Source: Blastocladiella emersonii ATCC 22665 | Taxonomy: Eukaryota > Fungi > Blastocladiomycota | Direction of reading: 5' to 3' | Assembly: GCA_025594325.1 (NCBI GenBank) | Contig: JANHCV010000005.1 | Coordinates: forward strand, 124,001 to 188,000 | Length of the DNA stretch: 64,000 bases | In this document: positions 4,624 through 11,054 of the stretch, in pieces | How the letters are laid out: each line of letters starts with the position of its first letter | Position numbering within the stretch: position 1 is the first letter of the stretch | Notes under the pieces: generated by a model | Database searches by the model: none | What the model was told of the DNA's origin: nothing | The model's input: only the letters and a program-made list of their open reading frames with translations | Program-made: the position numbers and the translations under genes

Positions 4624-7600
4624 ATGGCGCGCTCCTCCGGCCGCCGACCGCGCCCTGCGCGCGGGGCGCTCGCCCTCGCCGCCGTCGCCACGGTCGCCCT
4701 CGCCGCCCTCCTTGCCGCTTCGCCCGCCCTCGCCGCCACGGCGCCCAAGACGGGCTCGCCCACACCCGCGCCCACGGCCTCGAATGCCGCCCCCGCCGCC
4801 GCCCCGACCGAGCGCGAGCGCCGTAACCCCGTCCCTGGCACGACGCTCTCTCGCTGCAAGCATGTGTTGTCTGGTTGCTGACGCAGTCCTCTGCATCCCA
4901 CCTAGTTCCCAACGGTGGTGGCGGCGCGGTCAATCCGTGTTCGCTCACCTACATCAGCGTGGCCAGCGGCCTCCTCGCCTCGTGCACCACGCGAATGTGC
5001 GTCACCTACGGCATCTCGGGACCCCGCACCGTGTCGGGCCTCATTCTCCCCGTCTCGACCGCGGGCGTGGTCTCGGTGATCCCCACCTTCGTCTACTCGC
5101 GCCAAGGCTTTGGGGCGGTTACGACCGTGGTCACCAACTTTGCGCCGCCCGCTCCTACGGGCACCCTGACCATGCTGCACTCGACCGTGGCCATCGGAAA
5201 CCCAACGGTGCCTTTTACCTACTGCTTCACGGCACGCGCCGGCAACATGGCCGCCGCTCCCGGTACCATCTACCCGGTTGTCGACGGCGTAACGTACGTT
5301 TCTTCGCCACTGGCCGCTGTCACGGCAACTAACCGAAACCACTCCATAGCTGCACGCTCGCTGCCCGCACCCCCGTCATCAACGGAGGGACTTGCAACTC
5401 CGACTGCGTCGTCGCCACGCCGACCCCGACCTTTGACTGCCCCGCCGCCTGCGCCGCCGTCCAGGGCACCACCACCACCTCGCTCGGCTACACGACCACG
5501 GCCACCCGTACCCTCGTCACCCTTTTGCCCCAGACGGGCGCCGGCGCCGCCTGCCCGACCACGACGACGCCGTGCCCTTGCGCTCCGACGGCCTGCGTCA
5601 CGGGCGTCACGATCCAATCCACCACCACCGACATTGCGTGCTCGACGACCCAGGGCACCGTCACCACCAAGACGCTCAAGACCTTCGCCACCGTGGCCAC
5701 GTCGGCCCGCTTCGGCGGTACCTGCTCGCTAGGCGCCACCACCACCAACTTCGAGACCAAGTCGTGCCCGCCGCTGCCCACCAACTGCGTCCCGAACACG
5801 GCCATCCCGCCCGTCTTCGACTGCTCCTCGGCGTGCCGCGCCACCACCGCCTCGAACCCGACCCTCACCTCGTCCTACCCGTACACGGTCACCCCCGCCG
5901 CCAACGGCGGCAGCACCTGCTCCTCGGCCACCTCGACCTGCGCCTGCGCCAAGACAGACTGCGTCCTCGGCCCCGTCACCTCGCGCACCGACCCGATCGG
6001 CGCGACCTACGATTGCGCCACCGTCACGGCCACCACATCGTTTGTTTACGGCGCCGAGTACCGCACCACGCCCGTCCTCACGTCGGCCGCGCACGGCGGC
6101 TCCGCGTGCCCCATCACCACGGTCGCCACCTCGACGCTCTCGGCCTCGTGCGCGCCCGTCAACTGCGTCGTTGCCACGGTCACCCCGCTGGCGGACCGCT
6201 GCTCGACCGCCTGCTCGGCCCTCATCACCCCGCCGCCCGGCCCGCCCGCCGAGAATCGCGTCGCGCGTACCCTCACCCTCACGTTCAACGCCGACACCAC
6301 CCCGACGCCCGCCGCCCGCGGCGGGTCCGCGTGCCCGACCCTGACGGCGACCTGCGTCGCGCCGTGTGCGCCCTACAACTGCGTCCTCGGCGCGAACGCC
6401 GCGACCGAGGTGATTGGCCAGGAGGACTTCAGCTGCGCCACGGTCGAGGCCCCCGCCCCCGTCGAAACCACGTACCTGACGCGCCGCACCACCAGCGCCA
6501 TCCTCACCTCGGCCCATTTCGGCGGTACCTGCTCGTCGGTCGCCGAGACCAAGTATTCGACCTCGTGCGGCTCCGTTGACTGCACCCCGAGCGTCACGCC
6601 GACTCCGGCCACGGCCTGCGCCGACGCGTGCGCGGCCGACGAGACCGCGGTCGCCGATAACGCGGCGCCATACACGGCCACGCTCACAGTCAACTACCCG
6701 CCCCTCACGTCCGCCAACCGCGGCGGCGCCGCGTGCACGCCCGCCACGATTCCGTGCGACTCGGCGTGCTCGGCGGTTGATTGCACGCTGGGCGCGGCCA
6801 CCGCGTCCGAGACGTTCGGTCCCGCCACGTACGACTGCCAGGACTCGGACCTGGCAACGTCGACCACGTTCCGCGAGATCCGCAGCACCTACGCCATCGC
6901 CCGCTCGGCGCGCTACGGCGGCCGCGAGTGCACCACGGTCTCCAAGTTCCCGACCGCCACCGTGTGCCCGCCCGTCGACTGCACGCCCGAGGCCACGCCG
7001 ACCAATGAGCTGATCCCCGACGCCGAGTGCTCGGCCGCGTGCGAGGCCCACGCCACCGCCTACAACGACAACCTCGGCTTCACGCCGACGCTCTCCAAGT
7101 CGTACCCGAACACGGTCCGTGCGGCCGTCCGCGGCGGCAGCACCTGCCCGCTCGCGACGCGTACCTGCCCCGCGTGCGCTCCGACCAACTGCGTGGTGGA
7201 CCAGACGAGCGTTGTCGACGTGCAGGCCACGGGTCCCGCCGATTTCGATTGCGCGACCGTGGTTGCGACCGCCCCGGTCGAGACCACGTACCGCACCGCG
7301 ACGACCACCTTCGCCACGGCCCCGCCGCGGTTTGGCGGCTCGACTTGCTCGGACCACACGACCATTGTCAAGTCGTCGACCACCTGCTCGGCCGTCGACT
7401 GCGTCGGCTCGTACCCGACGGACCTCGCCGAGCGGTGCGCCGCGCGCTGCGTCGCGGACAATGCGCAGGAGGCCAACTACCAGCCCACGCTCACGCTCCC
7501 GTACGACGTGACGCTCACGCCGGCCAACCGCGGCGGCGTCGCATGCCCGACCTCGACCCACTACTGCCCGCAGTGCAACGCCGTCGACTGCGTCCTCGGC

Positions 7601-10153
7601 GCCGCCACGGCCTCGGCCACGTTCCGGTCCAACCCCGTCGACTGCAACACGCTCGCCGGGCCCGAGCCGCTCACCACCACGTGGTTCTCGGCCGAGACGA
7701 CGTACACGGTCGCGACGGGCCCGCGGAACGGCGGCACATGCGCGCCGACGAAGACGTCGACCGAGGTCGCGACGTGCACGGCCACGGACTGCGCCCCGAG
7801 CCCGATCGCGCCCGCGGCGTTTGACGCCGAGTGCGCGCGCAAGTGCGGCGTGCTCGCAACGGTGCTCCAGGACAACGCGGTCACGGCGCCGACGGCCACG
7901 CTCGAGCCGACGGTCGCGACCGCGGCCAACTTTGGCGGCAAGACGTGCACCGCGTCCGAGTCGGCGTGCCCGACGTGCGCGGGCATCGATTGCCAGCTCG
8001 GCACCGCCACGGTCATTGACTCGCCCATCTCGACCGACGGGCCGTCAACGTACGACTGCAAGACTGGCGACGCGGTCGTCACGCACGCGACGCTGTACGC
8101 GACGGTCGTCACGGCCACGCCCGCGCGGTTCGGCGGCAAGACGTGCGCGGGCAGCACCGTGTCCACGGGCACGCTGACCAAGGACTGCCGCCCGACGGAC
8201 TGCGTCGTCTCGGGCGACCCCGTGTTCGATTGTGCGGGTGCGTGCGCCGCGGCGACGGAGCTGGCCGAGTACGCGCCCGTCCTCGAGACCACGTACCCGA
8301 GCACGCCCACGGCCAAGGTCAACTCGGGCTCAGCGTGCCCCACGGCCAAGACCACGTGCCCGACGTGCGACCCCGTCGACTGCGCGCTCAGCGCCGACCC
8401 GTACGCCGAGACGACGCGCGACGTGCCGGTGCAGTGCGCGACGCTCTCGGGCTCGACGAGCGCCGCGACCAAGATCGCCAACAAGACGTACTCGGTCTCG
8501 CGCGCCGCCAAGCTCGGCGGCAAGGCGTGCGGCCCGACGACCTCGGTGTCGACGGTCGGGTACAAGACGTGCGGCTGCGACGCTGAGGTCGGCGACACGG
8601 CTACGCTCGCGACCAACTGCGCCCCGGCGTGCACGTACACGGCCAAGGTCCAGAGCGCCGACGGGTTCTACTACTCGGACGGCACCAAGGCGTGCACGAC
8701 GGCAACGCGCGACGGATGGTACGTTTTTCGACGGGTGCGGCCCGCTGGACTGGGACACTAATCCTGCCCCGCGCGCGGATTCGTAGCACGAGCATCAACC
8801 CGACGCCCTGCAGCTCGCAAATCCCCAAGACCGACTGCGTTCTCTCGGCGACGCCCTCGTGCCCCACGGTCACCTGCCCGACCGGCTCGCCGGTGGCCTC
8901 CACCACGAACATCAACTGCCAGTACTCGGTCCTGACGTCGGCGGCCAACGGCGGCGCCGCGTGCGGCGCAACGACCACGACCACGGACATTGCCCTGTAC
9001 CAGCTGTCGACCACGTCGTGCTCGGCGTCCACGATCAAGGCCTCGGCGACCACTGGCACGCTCGTCACCACGACGTGGTCGGGCAAGGTCGTGTCCACGT
9101 CGACCTACGTCGGCCCTACCTCCCTCGCCTGGTACGGCTTCATGACTCGCTGCTAGTGTTGACTCGCCGCTGACACCGACCCGGGAAATCTGTAGCACCA
9201 AGACGATTTCGAACACGGCCGAGCTCGCGTGCGAGACGACGGTGGTCTCAGCGGTCAAGGAGTCGTGCGCCTCGAACCCGCTTGGGACCAGCACCGACTT
9301 CAACGCCGTCTTCTACAACGCCTTCACGCAGTCGTCGGGCCGATCCGAGGGCCGCCTGGCCATTGGCGGCGCCGCGTCACTCACGGGCTACTCGATCGCC
9401 GACAGCGTCCCAGCGCTCGCGTGTGATGTGGCGGCACTCGTGGTCGGCGGCACGCTCAAGTTCCCGTCGGGCCGCGTCTACTCGGGCTCGATCCGCGTCG
9501 CGTCCAAGGCCGGCTCGTCGGTCGGCGACCCGGTCCTCACGGGTCTGCAGGGCTGCGCGACGTACGGGCTCGCCTCGCCGACCATCGCGTCCGTGTTCGA
9601 CTTTGACGCGCACCGCACCGCCATGGTCGCGCTCGCCAACAAGCTGACGTCGCTGCCCGCGACGCTCGAGATCGCGGCGTCGCCCGCGTGGGGCGCGCGC
9701 GTGGTCGTGCGCAAGGCGCAGCCGGCGGCGGGCGACAGCTTTGAGGTGCTGCCCATCGCCAAGCCGTCGGCGGGGTCGACGGACGTGCCCGAGATCAACT
9801 GGGACTCGGTGCTCGCGCTGGTTGGCACGTCGCGCACGCTCATCGTCAACCTCGACGCGGGCGTCACGGTCCGCGGCAACGACTACACCAAGCTCGTCAA
9901 CTCCGGGATCCCCGTCGTGTGGAACTTTGGGGCCACGGTCACCACGGCCGAGATCAAGTGGGTCACGCTGCCCGGGTTCGTGCTCGCGCCCGGCGCCAAG
10001 GTTTTGGGGTCCGGTACCGTCAACGGGTTCGTCGTCGCCAAGAACCTCGACGGCGCTGCTACGCTCTCGTTCGCACTCGCCAAGGGCGCCATGGGCAAGC
10101 TGTGTGTCCCGCCGGCGGGCCCCGCGGGTCCAACCACGGTCACCCTCGCTTGA
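4624..10153 (+). CDS. Giant (~1,750 aa) secreted Cys/Thr-rich protein: TSP1/spondin-like tandem repeats plus C-terminal choice-of-anchor-A-like domain (putative adhesin or wall protein)
   Basis: Signal peptide (ALALAAVATVALAALLAASPALA); introns at about 4820/4855-4903, 5295-5350, 8717-8787 and 9131-9195 join the ORFs in frame; recurring DC...C...T...A.(N/R/H/F)GG..C units; C-terminal DFNAVFYNAF...SEGRLAIGG...LIVNL...VVWNF...GFVLAPGA domain. Confidence 0.8.
5350..9000 (+). repeat. Intragenic degenerate protein repeats: ~17-19 units of ~65-75 aa alternating between two subtypes
   Basis: Motifs INGGTC, RFGGTC, ANGGSTC, AHGGSAC, ARGGSAC, HFGGTC, NRGGAAC, RYGGREC, VRGGSTC, RFGGSTC, NRGGVAC, RNGGTC, NFGGKTC, RFGGKTC, NSGSAC, KLGGKAC and ANGGAAC recur, each followed by a (V/T)(D/N)C. 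Confidence 0.85.
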
Positions 10154-10719
10154 TAACACTCGCCGCTCCTCCGCGTGGCCGTGCGGCCACCCAGTTTTGC
10201 ATATCCTACCACCTGTATTTCACGCTCGCCTCTATTCCAGCACACGTAATTGAACAATTTTATTTGCGATCTGCCGCCTCGTCTTGTGTTAACTCCGAGT
10301 AGCGGGACCAAGCTCTGCGCCAACCTTGTCGCAGCAAGTCCCGATGTTCACGCGCGCGAGACATCCCTGTGCTCGGCAGCTACAGATGTGGCGCGGCGCG
10401 TCCTGCTATTCAAGCCGCCGCAGGTTTCGACTGGGCGAGCGATTCCTTCGCCATGGCAGCAAGGACGCGGGCAAGCATTCTGGGTGCAGCCTCGACTCTG
10501 CTCCTTGCTCCGCATGTGGCCTGTGCAGCAAGATTACAGGGCGAGATGTGCAGGAAACGAACGATTTCGTGCGCACGCAATTGCGAGGTGCGAGACGCGT
10601 TGATTTATCACGTGTCGGGCACGGGCTGTGAGACAGCCTGCGAGGCAGCGCCGGCAGGGGGGCCTGGCGCCGGATCACCCAAGCGCCGACTTCACTCCCA
10701 CGCCCTCCTTGCCCACACC

Positions 10720-10810
10720 CATGATAGACCGGATGAAGCATATGCAAATGCCGCCGGTCGCGCTGCGTATCCCGGAGATCGTGGAGCGAGTGCTCTGCTT
10801 CGCGGTCTGA
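10720..10810 (+). pseudogene. Possible F-box-like gene fragment
   Basis: MQMPPVALRIPEIVERVLCFAV* resembles the 'AL.IPEI...IL' start of fungal F-box-like proteins; it is truncated and lies in a lower-GC intergenic stretch. Confidence 0.25.
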
Positions 10811-11054
10811 AGAAGGGAAGCGAGAGTGGACTAAAACGCATGTGCCATGACACAGCGATCACTCCAACTCGGTCCAGTAGCTTGACCGCGCCGCTGGTTT
10901 TCCCATTGCGTTGGGCTCATCTGCGTCGGGTCTTTCAGGCCGCGAGACGCGTTCGTTTATCACGTGAGGCGTGAGACACTTTGGTTTATGGTGCCCAATC
11001 AGGTCATGGTTTGCAACATGTCTCAGAAATGAATGTTTCCTCGTTTATTGCTAT

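What the first reader, a model, noticed from the sequence alone, without database searches (positions are those of the whole stretch)
4624..10153. Giant secreted protein: Trp-less thrombospondin/spondin-like repeat array fused to a bacterial-type choice-of-anchor-A domain
Seen in the sequence: a signal peptide, an unknown ~130-aa N-terminal module, ~17-19 Cys/Thr-rich repeats alternating between two subtypes (each ending in an NGG..C-like motif), and a terminal ~300-aa domain beginning DFNAVF...SEGRLAIGG. There is no TM helix or GPI-type tail. Established knowledge: the R.R....P.NGG..C motif characterises spondin-type TSP1 repeats of animal and apicomplexan adhesins, and choice-of-anchor-A (ice-binding-like beta-solenoid, collagen-adhesin related) domains are mainly known from bacterial surface proteins. 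Here the WxxW layer of TSP1 appears replaced by Thr/Tyr. Inference: a disulfide-stiffened, O-glycosylated stalk presents an adhesive or ice-binding head, possibly an undescribed zoospore/rhizoid attachment system of chimeric (HGT-derived) origin.
Basis: partly seen in the sequence, partly recalled or inferred. Interest (0 to 1): 0.8.

Follow-up and report, generated by a model that had tools for sequence, protein, structure and literature searches.

The report
Fungal secreted Trp-less TSR stalk protein
The water fungus Blastocladiella emersonii encodes a real 1,752-residue secreted protein: a long rod of 18 thrombospondin-type repeats that have lost their hallmark tryptophans, ending in a surface-binding domain best known from bacterial adhesins, which makes it a rare candidate adhesion protein from an early-diverging fungus.

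Summary
Window 4624-10153 (+) is one 5-exon gene. My splice model translates exactly to NCBI protein H9P43_004698 of Blastocladiella emersonii ATCC 22665 (1752 aa).

The protein has these parts, in order:
- a signal peptide
- a fast-evolving N-module of about 145 aa with unknown fold
- 18 Cys/Thr-rich repeats in strict 6-Cys/4-Cys alternation
- a Cys-containing linker
- one C-terminal choice-of-anchor-A domain (PF20597 8e-32; TIGR04215 5e-27)

It has no TM helix and no GPI tail.

Pfam's own TSP1 models miss the repeats. A profile built only from them retrieves spondin-type TSP1 proteins from 1.84 billion sequences: 25 of 30 tested hits pass Pfam's PF19028 cutoff. Alignments are in register, and profile-profile probability is about 93%. 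Fold evidence is consistent but not significant.

Catenaria anguillulae has the same linkage, TSR-like repeats followed by four CAA domains, with introns at matching positions. The fusion is therefore old within Blastocladiales.

The function is inferred, not shown: a secreted fibrillar adhesin or wall lectin. CAA domains already act in diatom adhesive trails and in Acanthamoeba cellulose-binding cyst-wall lectins, and occur in other fungi.

HGT origin is unresolved and ice binding is unlikely. The scan noted the paralogue separately (s1-283677). This is a new variant of known kinds.

The parts
4624..4822 (+). Exon 1. It encodes the signal peptide (aa 1-37, nt 4624-4734) and an Ala/Pro-rich linker (to aa 66).
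   Evidence: ATG at 4624. The hydrophobic core at aa 14-32 has KD 2.33, with an ALA|A cleavage motif. The model is identical to P0001.
4823..4905 (+). Intron 1 (83 nt, GTAACC...CCTAG, CTGAC branch-like site).
   Evidence: This is the only GT..AG choice that joins frame 1 to frame 0 and reproduces P0001.
4906..5401 (+). N-terminal module (aa 67-213; exon 2 plus the start of exon 3, interrupted by intron 2 at 5294-5349). It is beta-rich with 7 Cys and ends in a half-repeat motif, RTPVINGGTCNSDC.
   Evidence: No Pfam or NCBIfam hit at E<=1 for the stop-free piece 4827-5729 that covers all but its last four residues. AF2 failed (pLDDT 37). It is only 49% identical between the two paralogues. No homologue was detected at the Catenaria locus.
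5402..9021 (+). Array of 18 TSR-derived repeats (aa 214-1397), interrupted by intron 3 at 8719-8786.
- 6-Cys (A) repeats start at nt 5402, 5783, 6161, 6578, 6977, 7397, 7787, 8198 and 8576.
- 4-Cys (B) repeats start at nt 5591, 5957, 6377, 6779, 7187, 7586, 7988, 8378 and 8833.
   Evidence: Repeat dissection and alignment A1. The profile retrieves PF19028 proteins. Alignments are in register. hhalign gives 92.8% and 93.5%. The AF2 model of A3-B3 has three long strands in the B repeat at pLDDT 80-88.
8719..8786 (+). Intron 3 (68 nt, GTACGT..GTAG). It is phase 2 and splits a Cys codon (TG|C) inside repeat A9.
   Evidence: The Catenaria homologue has an annotated intron at the same position and phase..TRDG|C|TSINPTPC against ..TRQG|C|PSAATTSPC.
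9022..9277 (+). Cys-containing Ser/Thr-rich linker (about aa 1398-1461), interrupted by intron 4 at 9132-9195 (64 nt, GTACGG..TGTAG, phase 2, split Cys codon).
   Evidence: An equivalent split-Cys junction is inferred in Catenaria at L002 9045-9126.
9278..10060 (+). Choice-of-anchor-A / pAdhesive_15 domain (about aa 1462-1722).
   Evidence: PF20597 at 8.4e-32 (111.5 bits against a cut-off of 23.8), covering profile positions 1-250 of 254. TIGR04215 at 4.8e-27 (95.3 against 29). It is 31-34% identical to each of four Catenaria CAA domains.
10061..10153 (+). Short C-terminal tail (..SFALAKGAMGKLCVPPAGPAGPTTVTLA) and stop codon. It is not hydrophobic.
   Evidence: Mean KD of the last 20 residues is 0.61. 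A similar ..SFAL....GCVP.. ending follows the last Catenaria CAA domain.

Best explanation
This is one intact gene of Blastocladiella emersonii (H9P43_004698). It encodes a secreted extracellular fibril with no membrane anchor.

Shown here:
- After the signal peptide comes a variable N-terminal module.
- Next is a stalk of 18 disulfide-bonded repeats descended from spondin-type thrombospondin type-1 repeats (TSRs). They have lost the Trp/Arg ladder and the C-mannosylation and O-fucosylation motifs. They alternate strictly between a 6-Cys and a 4-Cys form.
[quoted passage not shown] This is the putative adhesive domain of bacterial fibrillar adhesins.

Inferred:
- The protein works as a fibrillar adhesin or lectin.
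- The TSR rod would be roughly 90 nm long if each repeat spans about 5 nm, as in solved TSRs. It probably carries fungal-type O-mannose on its many Thr/Ser. It holds the two end modules apart.
- The CAA domain binds a polysaccharide or surface. Candidates are cellulose of plant debris, or the fungus's own chitin/glucan wall, as the CAA of Acanthamoeba Jonah lectins does.
- The fast-evolving N-module supplies a second, more variable contact.
- Together these would tether encysted zoospores, germlings or rhizoids to substrate, or build a fibrillar outer wall layer.

The TSR-like + CAA fusion predates the split of Blastocladiella and Catenaria.
For: Gene and secretion:
- The splice model is identical to P0001.
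- The signal peptide is the only TM-grade hydrophobic segment, and there is no hydrophobic C-terminal (GPI-type) tail.

TSR descent:
- An HMM built only from the nine AB units found 34 proteins at E<=1e-3 among 1.84e9.
- The best non-self hit is from Catenaria (3.7e-18).
- Of 30 hits tested, 25 exceed Pfam's cut-off for PF19028 TSP1_spondin, and no other Cys-rich family appears.
- Alignments put DC, CxxxC, GGxxC and the terminal Cys in register.
- Reversed or shuffled hits score at most 3.5 bits against 36-82 bits forward.
- hhalign pairs A repeats best with 6-Cys TSRs (92.8%) and B repeats best with 4-Cys TSRs (93.5%).
- Canonical TSR HMMs place weak (1-13 bit) matches on the repeats across the array, in register, and on none of the controls.
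- Trp-less Abeoforma repeats (P0011) are hit by both sides.
- The AF2 model of a B repeat shows three long antiparallel strands at pLDDT 80-88. Its top Foldseek hits are TSP-1, properdin and C6 TSRs.

CAA domain.

Conserved architecture:
- At the Catenaria locus, TSR-like exons are followed by a 1502-aa stop-free ORF with four PF20597 domains (2.3e-121).
- Two introns sit at matching split-Cys positions.
- The six Blastocladiales CAA domains group together with SH-aLRT 100.

Function by analogy:
- The Jonah lectin, whose candidate carbohydrate-binding module is its CAA domain, binds cellulose and localises to the Acanthamoeba cyst wall (PMC6541295).
- CAA-bearing Trailins sit in diatom adhesive trails (10.1101/2023.03.06.531300).
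- Secreted TSR proteins act in Phytophthora spore attachment (Robold & Hardham 2005, cited in PMC3869178).
Against: - Pfam TSP_1/TSP1_spondin models give no hit at E<=1, and a PDB sequence search with the repeat profile found nothing at E<=10.
- In the reverse direction the full-sequence score of canonical TSR HMMs is cancelled by bias correction.
- Whole-protein E-values sum many weak, non-independent repeat matches. Single-domain scores are only 12-35 bits.
- The TSR sets used for hhalign were taken from the hits of the same search.
- Structural matches are not significant (Foldseek E about 2; VIA Z<=3.1).
- The A repeat is modelled poorly (pLDDT about 60).
- There is no expression, localisation, binding or glycosylation data.
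- Which end contacts the cell is unknown.
- The single-gene reading of the Catenaria locus rests on an inferred intron.
Confidence: 0.6

Rival explanations
1. The protein is a structural wall or cyst-coat component rather than a substrate adhesin. The CAA domain binds the fungus's own chitin/glucan, and the TSR rods form a protective fibrillar outer layer, as Jonah lectins do in the Acanthamoeba ectocyst.
For: - Jonah(1) lectins have the same order of parts: signal peptide, a Thr/Lys/Cys-rich region, then one CAA domain. They have no anchor and sit in the cyst wall (PMC6541295).
- The B. emersonii protein also lacks an anchor, so retention needs a wall-binding module.
Against: - There is no localisation or binding data for this protein.
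- A stalk of about 1200 aa and a divergent second end module suit a bridging role better than a packing role.
- This rival overlaps with the main explanation rather than excluding it.
Confidence: 0.25
2. The repeats are not TSR homologues. They are an independent Cys/Thr-rich repeat that converged on a similar Cys spacing and GGxxC turn.
For: - Pfam and PDB sequence searches are blank.
- The Trp and Arg layers that define the TSR core are absent.
- The reverse HMM search is not significant after bias correction.
- Fold matches are not significant.
Against: - Hits of the repeat profile are almost exclusively PF19028 proteins, although EGF-like and other Cys-rich repeats are far commoner in databases.
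- Register is kept across four to six Cys plus DC and GG.
- Subtype-specific best matches hold: A with 6-Cys, B with 4-Cys.
- Single-Trp and Trp-less intermediates exist: P0018, P0013 and P0011.
- Controls are flat.
Confidence: 0.15
3. The C-terminal domain is an ice-binding/antifreeze head, and the protein protects the cell against freezing.
For: - Pfam names PF20597 'putative ice-binding-like adhesive domain'.
- Predicted diatom CAA structures resemble ice-binding proteins (10.1101/2023.03.06.531300).
Against: - No CAA domain has been shown to bind ice. The same paper notes that a close structural match, ComZ, comes from a thermophile.
- The Jonah lectin, whose candidate binding module is CAA, binds cellulose (PMC6541295).
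- B. emersonii is a mesophilic pond saprotroph (own knowledge).
- No solved ice-binding protein is detectable by sequence.
Confidence: 0.03
4. The whole stalk-plus-head architecture was taken over from a bacterial fibrillar adhesin, rather than being a eukaryotic TSR array fused to a transferred CAA domain.
For: - Several profile hits that carry PF19028 repeats look bacterial. P0022 starts like a lipoprotein. P0023 and P0034 have bacterial-looking signal peptides, and P0034 also a C-terminal tail that resembles a type-IX (Por) secretion signal (judged by eye).
- CAA is overwhelmingly bacterial.
Against: - None of the 26 CAA proteins or the TSR hits sampled combines both domains (precomputed Pfam lists).
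- The nearest CAA relatives found are at most 32% identical.
- The gene has spliceosomal introns shared with Catenaria.
- The closest repeat relatives outside Blastocladiales include eukaryotes: Lagenidium and Abeoforma.
Confidence: 0.07

Closest known systems
Spondin-type thrombospondin type-1 repeats (Pfam PF19028 TSP1_spondin; F-spondin, apicomplexan TRAP/MIC2, oomycete TSR proteins such as Lagenidium giganteum DAZ96625.1)
   Same: - Repeats of about 55-70 aa that start with DC and have a CxxxC pair, a ..P/A..GGxxC turn and terminal Cys.
- 6-Cys and 4-Cys forms occur at the same positions.
- The repeats are arranged head to tail in secreted adhesive proteins.
- The match comes from the profile search, in register.
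   Different: - There is no WxxW layer (1 Trp in 1184 residues) and mostly no RxR layer.
- There is no CSx(S/T)CG O-fucose site and no C-mannosylation site.
- The B-strand region is longer and Thr/Tyr-rich.
- Pfam models do not recognise the repeats.
- The strict A/B alternation is not seen in the canonical proteins inspected.
Acanthamoeba castellanii Jonah(1) cyst-wall lectins (PMC6541295)
   Same: - A eukaryotic, secreted, anchorless protein.
- An N-terminal Thr- and Cys-rich region is followed by one CAA domain.
- The Jonah lectin was shown to bind cellulose and, less well, chitin.
   Different: - Jonah proteins are 44-58 kDa with a short Thr/Lys/Cys region that is not known to be TSR-like.
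- They come from a different supergroup, and their CAA sequences could not be compared here.
- The fungal protein has an 18-repeat stalk and an extra N-module.
Diatom Trailins (Craspedostauros australis adhesive-trail proteins; 10.1101/2023.03.06.531300)
   Same: - Very large secreted eukaryotic proteins that combine a CAA domain with long Pro/Thr/Ser-rich regions.
- They localise to material that attaches the cell to the substratum.
- Their CAA domain is inferred to be of bacterial origin.
   Different: - Trailin spacers are low-complexity PTS regions, not disulfide-bonded TSR-type domains.
- That study reports CAA as largely restricted to bacteria, rotifers and diatoms, so the Blastocladiales genes were not part of it.
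Phytophthora PcVsv1-type zoospore adhesive (Robold & Hardham 2005, Curr Genet 47:307, cited in PMC3869178)
   Same: A long secreted array of TSRs in a zoosporic organism, released during spore attachment. It is the nearest functional analogy for the stalk.
   Different: - It has canonical Trp-containing TSRs and no CAA domain.
- It is from an oomycete, not a fungus.
- The repeat number (about 47) is from my memory of that paper, not checked here.
Bacterial choice-of-anchor-A proteins / fibrillar adhesins (TIGR04215, PF20597)
   Same: The same head domain at high significance, within the general stalk-plus-adhesive-domain design.
   Different: - Bacterial members carry PEP-CTERM, SdrD_B, CarboxypepD_reg or DUF11 modules and a sorting signal.
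- The fungal protein has a eukaryotic signal peptide, introns, a TSR-type stalk and no anchor.
- Identity is at most 32%.
Catenaria anguillulae locus MCFL01000002.1 837030-854125 (ORZ40967.1 plus the downstream PF20597 gene)
   Same: - It has orthologous parts: one A and one B repeat, homologues of the variant last pair (A9, B9), and a linker with the same split-Cys introns, followed by CAA.
- It has the same C-terminal ..FAL...GCVP ending.
   Different: - It has only four repeats instead of 18.
- It has a Gly/Ser/Thr spacer and four tandem CAA domains instead of one.
- No detectable N-module homologue was found.
- It is currently annotated as two separate genes.

Membership tests
Thrombospondin type-1 repeat (TSP_1 PF00090 / TSP1_spondin PF19028) | Significant match to the family's curated HMMs | tested here: not met
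   hmmscan of the 1142-aa repeat ORF and of all other pieces gave no TSP1 family at E<=1. NCBIfam also gave none.
Thrombospondin type-1 repeat (TSP_1 PF00090 / TSP1_spondin PF19028) | Conserved Cys framework (6 Cys, or the 4-Cys spondin variant) with an N-terminal DC, a CxxxC pair, a GGxxC turn and C-terminal Cys | tested here: met
   A repeats have 6 Cys and B repeats 4 Cys, at invariant columns. HMM alignments to PF19028 proteins keep these positions in register. B repeats lack the second Cys of CxxxC and one C-terminal Cys together, as 4-Cys Lagenidium TSRs do.
Thrombospondin type-1 repeat (TSP_1 PF00090 / TSP1_spondin PF19028) | WxxW(xxW) tryptophan layer stacked with an RxR layer (the CWR core) | tested here: not met
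   There are no WxxW motifs and one Trp in the 1184-residue stalk. Arg occurs at B-strand positions in only a few repeats.
Thrombospondin type-1 repeat (TSP_1 PF00090 / TSP1_spondin PF19028) | Reciprocal profile similarity to bona fide family members | tested here: inconclusive
   Forward direction is strong: 25 of 30 hits are PF19028 proteins, E down to 1e-12, controls are flat, and hhalign gives about 93%. Reverse direction is weak: 1-13 bits per repeat in register, with the full score cancelled by bias correction.
Thrombospondin type-1 repeat (TSP_1 PF00090 / TSP1_spondin PF19028) | Elongated three-stranded antiparallel fold | tested here: inconclusive
   The AF2 B repeat has three long strands at pLDDT 80-88, while the A repeat is at pLDDT about 60. 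TSP-1, properdin, C6 and CCN3 TSRs top the lists, but with Foldseek E about 2 and VIA Z of 2.3-2.8, no better than unrelated rows.
Thrombospondin type-1 repeat (TSP_1 PF00090 / TSP1_spondin PF19028) | TSR-specific glycosylation motifs (C-mannosylation WxxW; POFUT2 site CxxS/TCG) | tested here: not met
   There is no WxxW. The residue before the second Cys of CxxxC is A, R or K in all A repeats. PMC10481521 reports only GT10 fucosyltransferases in Blastocladiomycota.
Choice-of-anchor A domain (TIGR04215 / PF20597 pAdhesive_15) | Match to the curated models above cut-off over nearly full length | tested here: met
   PF20597 scores 111.5 bits (cut-off 23.8) over profile 1-250 of 254. TIGR04215 scores 95.3 bits (cut-off 29) over profile 1-246 of 255. 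The conserved EGRLA.GG, LVVGG and APxA motifs align with bacterial members.
Choice-of-anchor A domain (TIGR04215 / PF20597 pAdhesive_15) | Ice-binding-protein-like beta-solenoid fold | not tested
The fold is taken from Pfam's description and from predicted diatom CAA structures (10.1101/2023.03.06.531300).
Choice-of-anchor A domain (TIGR04215 / PF20597 pAdhesive_15) | Accompanied by one of several bacterial sorting or anchor signals (the origin of the name) | tested here: not met
   There is no C-terminal hydrophobic or sorting segment. Bacterial relatives carry PEP-CTERM and similar signals. This is expected for a eukaryotic member.
Fibrillar adhesin (stalk of repeated domains + adhesive domain + cell anchor) | Repeated stalk domains plus a terminal putative adhesive domain | tested here: met
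   There are 18 repeats plus CAA.
Fibrillar adhesin (stalk of repeated domains + adhesive domain + cell anchor) | Demonstrated adhesion and cell-surface attachment | not testable with these tools
   This needs localisation and binding experiments. No anchor is visible in the sequence.

The most novel reading that the evidence does not exclude
Blastocladiales carry a lineage-specific extracellular attachment system built on a structurally new TSR subclass. This would be a TSR fold that folds and stays rigid without the Trp-Arg core and without C-mannose or O-fucose, held only by disulfides and a Thr/Tyr-rich sheet. Its CAA head would be a polysaccharide lectin that fixes encysting zoospores or rhizoids to plant debris. 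It would be the first molecularly defined adhesin of a zoosporic fungus, and a natural experiment on what the tryptophan ladder is for.
Probability: 0.3. Interest if true: 0.75.

Novelty: new variant of a known kind. Interest (0 to 1): 0.55.

Why it matters
**Fungal adhesins.** Adhesins outside the Dikarya are almost undescribed (PMC6023273). How zoospores, cysts and rhizoids of zoosporic fungi attach is not known at the molecular level. This gene and its Catenaria counterpart give a concrete, conserved candidate.

**TSR structure.** The protein is also of structural interest. TSRs are defined by a Trp-Arg ladder whose C-mannosylation supports folding (PMC6954052). Here an 18-repeat array appears to have dispensed with that ladder, in a lineage reported to lack O-fucosyltransferases of the POFUT type (PMC10481521).

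**CAA domain.** The finding adds Blastocladiales to the eukaryotes that use the enigmatic CAA domain, alongside diatom Trailins and Acanthamoeba Jonah lectins. It also shows CAA on a new kind of stalk.

**Limits.** The parts are each known, the gene is already annotated (as hypothetical), and the function is entirely inferred.

Tried and rejected
Searches and models that gave nothing useful:
- Pfam and NCBIfam scans of all exon pieces detected only the CAA domain and no TSP1.
- A PDB sequence search with the repeat profile found nothing at E<=10. With the C-terminal 355 aa it returned only noise.
- Fold searches with the A3-B3 model (Foldseek PDB, VIA second look and VIA wide) listed TSR structures near the top but without significance. 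I do not count this as proof of fold.
- The AF2 model of the N-module plus first repeat, from a 2-sequence alignment, had pLDDT 37 and is unusable. The N-module fold stays unknown.
- tblastn of the N-module against the Catenaria locus found nothing at E<0.6. My idea that the N-module is a TSR with a 100-aa insertion rests only on motifs at its two ends and is not supported.
- Word-seeded homologue searches with the CAA domain returned only bacterial or metagenomic proteins, at most 32% identical over full-length (84-93%) coverage.
I could not collect named bacterial relatives or other eukaryotic CAA sequences, so the HGT question stays open.
- Literature searches found no TSR or adhesin work on Blastocladiella or chytrids.

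Readings I rejected:
- Separate genes or an annotation artefact. The frames, the paralogue and Catenaria all agree on one gene.
- The paralogue being an allele or a syntenic duplicate. It has different neighbours and a mosaic identity pattern.
- Ice binding as the main function.

Full report
**Observation**

The window is about 70% G+C. Between 4500 and 10300 the + strand holds a chain of stop-free stretches in changing frames. Reading the junctions gave four short GT..AG introns:
- 4823-4905
- 5294-5349
- 8719-8786
- 9132-9195

Their donors are GTAACC, GTACGT, GTACGT and GTACGG, and they have CTGAC/CTAAC-type branch sites. The five exons (4624-4822, 4906-5293, 5350-8718, 8787-9131, 9196-10153) give 5259 nt. 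Their translation is identical, residue for residue, to a database protein of 1752 aa: H9P43_004698 of Blastocladiella emersonii ATCC 22665, annotated 'hypothetical protein'.

**Anatomy**

- Signal peptide. Residues 1-37 are a classical signal peptide, with an Arg-rich n-region. Its hydrophobic core has mean hydropathy 2.33, the only TM-grade segment in the protein, and an A-L-A|A site follows. The last 20 residues are not hydrophobic, so there is no TM helix and no GPI-type tail.
- N-module. Residues 67-213 form a beta-rich module with no family match.
- Repeats. Residues 214-1397 are 18 repeats of 60-72 aa. They alternate without exception between a 6-Cys form and a 4-Cys form:
  - A: DC-x10-12-CxxxC-...-GGxxC-x6-7-C-x1-3-C-x4
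  - B: DCVLG...-(Y/F)DC-...-TSAxxGGxxC-x11-13-C-x4
  - The last pair (A9, B9) is a variant.
- Composition. The stalk is 27% Ser+Thr, 7.5% Cys and has one Trp. The whole protein has a single N-glycosylation sequon.
- Age of the array. AB units are only 28-42% identical to each other, so the array is old rather than a recent tandem expansion.
- Linker. A linker of about 65 aa, with four Cys, leads to the C-terminal domain.

**C-terminal domain**

- PF20597 pAdhesive_15 at 8.4e-32, covering 250 of 254 profile positions.
- TIGR04215 at 4.8e-27.

The conserved EGRLA.GG, LVVGG.L and APxAxV motifs align with bacterial members. The nearest relatives that the word-seeded searches could reach are bacterial or metagenomic proteins. 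They carry PEP-CTERM, SdrD_B, CarboxypepD_reg or DUF11 companions and are at most 32% identical over full-length (84-93%) coverage. No solved structure is detectable by sequence.

**Are the repeats TSRs?**

Negative results come first:
- Pfam's TSP_1 and TSP1_spondin models give nothing at E<=1.
- The repeat profile finds no PDB sequence at E<=10.

Positive results:
- I built an HMM only from the nine AB units of this protein and seven units of its paralogue (A1) and searched 1.84 billion representative proteins. It found 34 proteins at E<=1e-3.
- The best non-self hit is a Catenaria anguillulae protein (3.7e-18). The next hits score 1e-12 to 1e-10.
- Of 30 hits scanned with Pfam, 25 exceed the curated cut-off of PF19028 (spondin-like TSP1), one falls below it and four have no family. 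No other Cys-rich repeat family appears.
- One hit is named: a 'Spondin-like TSP1 domain-containing protein' of the oomycete Lagenidium giganteum.
- The HMM alignments are in register. The repeat's DC falls on the DC that precedes the WSxWS strand. CxxxC falls on CSxxCG. ..GGxxC falls on ..GGxxC. The terminal Cys fall on the terminal Cys.
- Reversed or shuffled versions of all hits score at most 3.5 bits, against 36-82 bits forward. Composition and Cys density alone do not explain the matches.
- Profile-profile comparison pairs A repeats best with 6-Cys TSRs (92.8%) and B repeats best with 4-Cys TSRs (93.5%). The crossed pairings score 59% (A with 4-Cys) and 89% (B with 6-Cys), and A against B 67-81%.
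- Intermediates exist. One metagenomic protein has repeats NCVLGPW...CSKLC...TPAINGGTC with a single Trp (P0018). Another has single-Trp 4-Cys repeats (P0013). The ichthyosporean Abeoforma whisleri has a Trp-less, membrane-anchored array (P0011). Both my profile and HMMs built from canonical TSRs recognise that array.

Caveats:
- The whole-protein E-values add up many weak repeat matches that are not independent. Single-domain scores are 12-35 bits.
- The TSR sets used for hhalign came from the same search.
- In the reverse direction, canonical TSR HMMs place matches of only 1-13 bits on the repeats. The matches are in register and absent from controls, but the summed score is cancelled by bias correction.

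I conclude that the repeats are remote, derived members of the spondin-type TSR superfamily, with about 0.8 confidence. They have lost the Trp and Arg layers. They have also lost both TSR-specific glycosylation motifs: there is no WxxW, and the residue before the second Cys of CxxxC is A, R or K, never S or T. B repeats lack the second Cys of CxxxC and one C-terminal Cys together. That is what one expects if those two form a disulfide, as C2-C6 do in thrombospondin-1 TSRs (from memory of Tan et al. 2002, not checked here).

**Fold**

AlphaFold2 on A3-B3, using the 16-row repeat alignment, gave mean pLDDT 73. The B repeat scores 80-88 and has three long antiparallel strands. These lie where TSR strands A, B and C would be, with GGxxC in the B-C turn. 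The A repeat scores about 60, with a doubtful helix.

Foldseek's top rows are thrombospondin-1 TSR2-3, complement C6, properdin and midkine, but at E of 2-6. VIA-align gives Z of 2.3-2.8 for TSP-1, properdin and CCN3 TSRs, no better than unrelated rows. The fold evidence is consistent but not discriminating.

**Relatives and history**

*Paralogue.* B. emersonii has one paralogue, P0002 = H9P43_002437 (1759 aa), on another contig with different neighbours. Similarity is mosaic:

| Region | Identity |
|---|---|
| N-module | 49% (protein) |
| First repeats | 79% (protein) |
| Central repeats | 95-99% (protein); DNA reaches 99% at 6847-7146 |
| CAA domain | 76% (protein) |

Detectable DNA similarity starts at 5347, the end of intron 2, about three bases before exon 3. 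This pattern suggests gene conversion within the stalk, faster evolution of the two end modules, or both. The scan's note s1-283677 describes this paralogue with the same reading. Its 5544 letters equal the paralogue's gene span.

*Catenaria.* The TSR-like protein ORZ40967.1 is annotated as a 339-aa partial protein. It holds one A repeat, one B repeat, and clear counterparts of A9 and B9. An annotated intron sits at the same place and phase as B. emersonii intron 3: ..TRQG|C|PSAATTSPC against ..TRDG|C|TSINPTPC.

Its annotated end runs through a GTGTGT donor into a hydrophobic read-through. Splicing L002 9045-9126 instead (82 nt, frame-correct, again a TG|C split Cys) joins it to a 1502-aa stop-free ORF. 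That junction matches B. emersonii intron 4. The ORF contains a Gly/Ser/Thr spacer and four tandem CAA domains (PF20597 2.3e-121, four stretches). Each is 31-34% identical to the B. emersonii domain. The last ends in the same ..FAL...GCVP motif.

*CAA tree.* In a maximum-likelihood tree, the two Blastocladiella and four Catenaria CAA domains form one group (SH-aLRT 100), apart from 27 bacterial or metagenomic domains. The TSR-like + CAA linkage therefore predates the split of the two genera. Afterwards Blastocladiella expanded the stalk and Catenaria expanded the head.

The tree is unrooted in effect, and its outgroup sample is small and biased. It cannot say whether the CAA domain came by horizontal transfer.

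**Mechanism**

Shown:
- The protein has a signal peptide and no TM helix or GPI-type tail, so it is predicted to be secreted and anchorless.
- It has a long disulfide-rich repeat stalk.
- It has a CAA domain at the C-terminus and a variable module at the N-terminus.

Inferred from named precedents:
- CAA is the putative adhesive domain of bacterial fibrillar adhesins (Pfam).
- The Acanthamoeba Jonah lectin, whose candidate binding module is its CAA domain, binds cellulose, binds chitin less well, and sits in the cyst wall (PMC6541295).
- CAA-bearing Trailins are confined to diatom adhesive trails (10.1101/2023.03.06.531300).
- Secreted TSR arrays take part in Phytophthora spore attachment (Robold & Hardham 2005, cited in PMC3869178).

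My best reading is a fibrillar adhesin or lectin. The rod would be about 90 nm long if each repeat spans about 5 nm. It would hold a polysaccharide- or surface-binding CAA head and a second, fast-evolving end module apart. This would either bridge the cell wall and the substrate or form a fibrillar outer wall layer. Heavy O-mannosylation of the Thr/Ser-rich stalk is plausible but untested. Ice binding is unlikely.

**Comparison with what is known, and novelty**

Each part is known. CAA domains have been reported from diatoms, rotifers, Acanthamoeba, Neocallimastigomycota (called 'oomycetes' in PMC6541295), Mucor (PMC11943222) and a stramenopile flagellate (PMC7852580).

What I did not find described:
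- the combination of a TSR-type stalk with a CAA head
- a TSR array lacking the whole Trp/Arg core in a fungus
- any adhesin candidate in Blastocladiomycota (PMC6023273)

PMC10481521 reports only GT10 fucosyltransferases in Blastocladiomycota. That fits the missing O-fucose motif. I could not check for DPY19. I rate this a new variant of known kinds, of moderate to good interest. Its value depends on experiments.

**Limits**

- There are no expression or localisation data.
- The N-module fold is unknown (AF2 pLDDT 37).
- There is no structural model of the CAA domain.
- Eukaryotic CAA sequences from other groups could not be fetched, so origin by HGT stays open.

Noticed in passing
window 5347-10113 vs L001 10718-15492: The two dispersed paralogues (H9P43_004698 and H9P43_002437) show mosaic DNA identity: 77-80% at both ends and up to 99% in the central repeats (6847-7146). 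Similarity starts at 5347, the end of intron 2, about three bases before exon 3. This looks like gene conversion within the stalk between non-syntenic copies.
   Followed up: partly
L002 8001-13561 (Catenaria anguillulae MCFL01000002.1): The public annotation seems to split one gene in two. The 339-aa 'partial' TSR-like protein ends in an intron read-through. The downstream 722-aa PF20597 gene is only part of a 1502-aa stop-free ORF (L002 9053-13558) with four CAA domains behind a long GGSGTGG spacer.
   Followed up: partly
P0011 (Abeoforma whisleri EP00121_P011490, 1068 aa): This ichthyosporean protein has about 14 Trp-less, Arg-poor TSR-like repeats (..CPVDCVDKEVV..C.C....VYTNYEIVTPAQNNGAQC..) and a C-terminal TM segment. 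Pfam sees no TSP1 in it, but HMMs built from canonical TSRs do. Trp-less TSR derivatives are therefore not unique to Blastocladiales.
   Followed up: partly
P0018 (ENA metagenome contig, 618 aa): It has nine almost identical 55-aa TSRs with a single Trp (NCVLGPWTDSTSCSKLC...TPAINGGTC). Their start and GG-turn motifs are strikingly close to the B. emersonii repeats. The source organism is unknown.
   Followed up: no
window 8717-8787 and 9130-9196; L002 around 8606-8690 and 9043-9127: Both downstream introns of the gene, and their Catenaria counterparts, are phase-2 introns that split a Cys codon as TG|C, directly after a Gly or Ala. The intron positions are more conserved than most of the protein sequence.
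   Followed up: partly
P0022, P0023, P0031, P0034, P0036: Several PF19028 (spondin-type TSP1) proteins among the hits look bacterial: one starts like a lipoprotein (P0022), others have bacterial-looking signal peptides, and one (P0034) has a C-terminal tail resembling a type-IX secretion signal. Spondin-type TSRs seem to occur in bacteria too, which bears on where such stalks come from.
   Followed up: no
window 10154-11054: Between this gene and the MICU1-like gene on the minus strand, G+C drops to about 0.60 (against 0.69-0.72 over most of the gene, 0.665 at its 3' end). Another scan note (s1-078415) reads an F-box-like relic here. I did not examine it.
   Followed up: no
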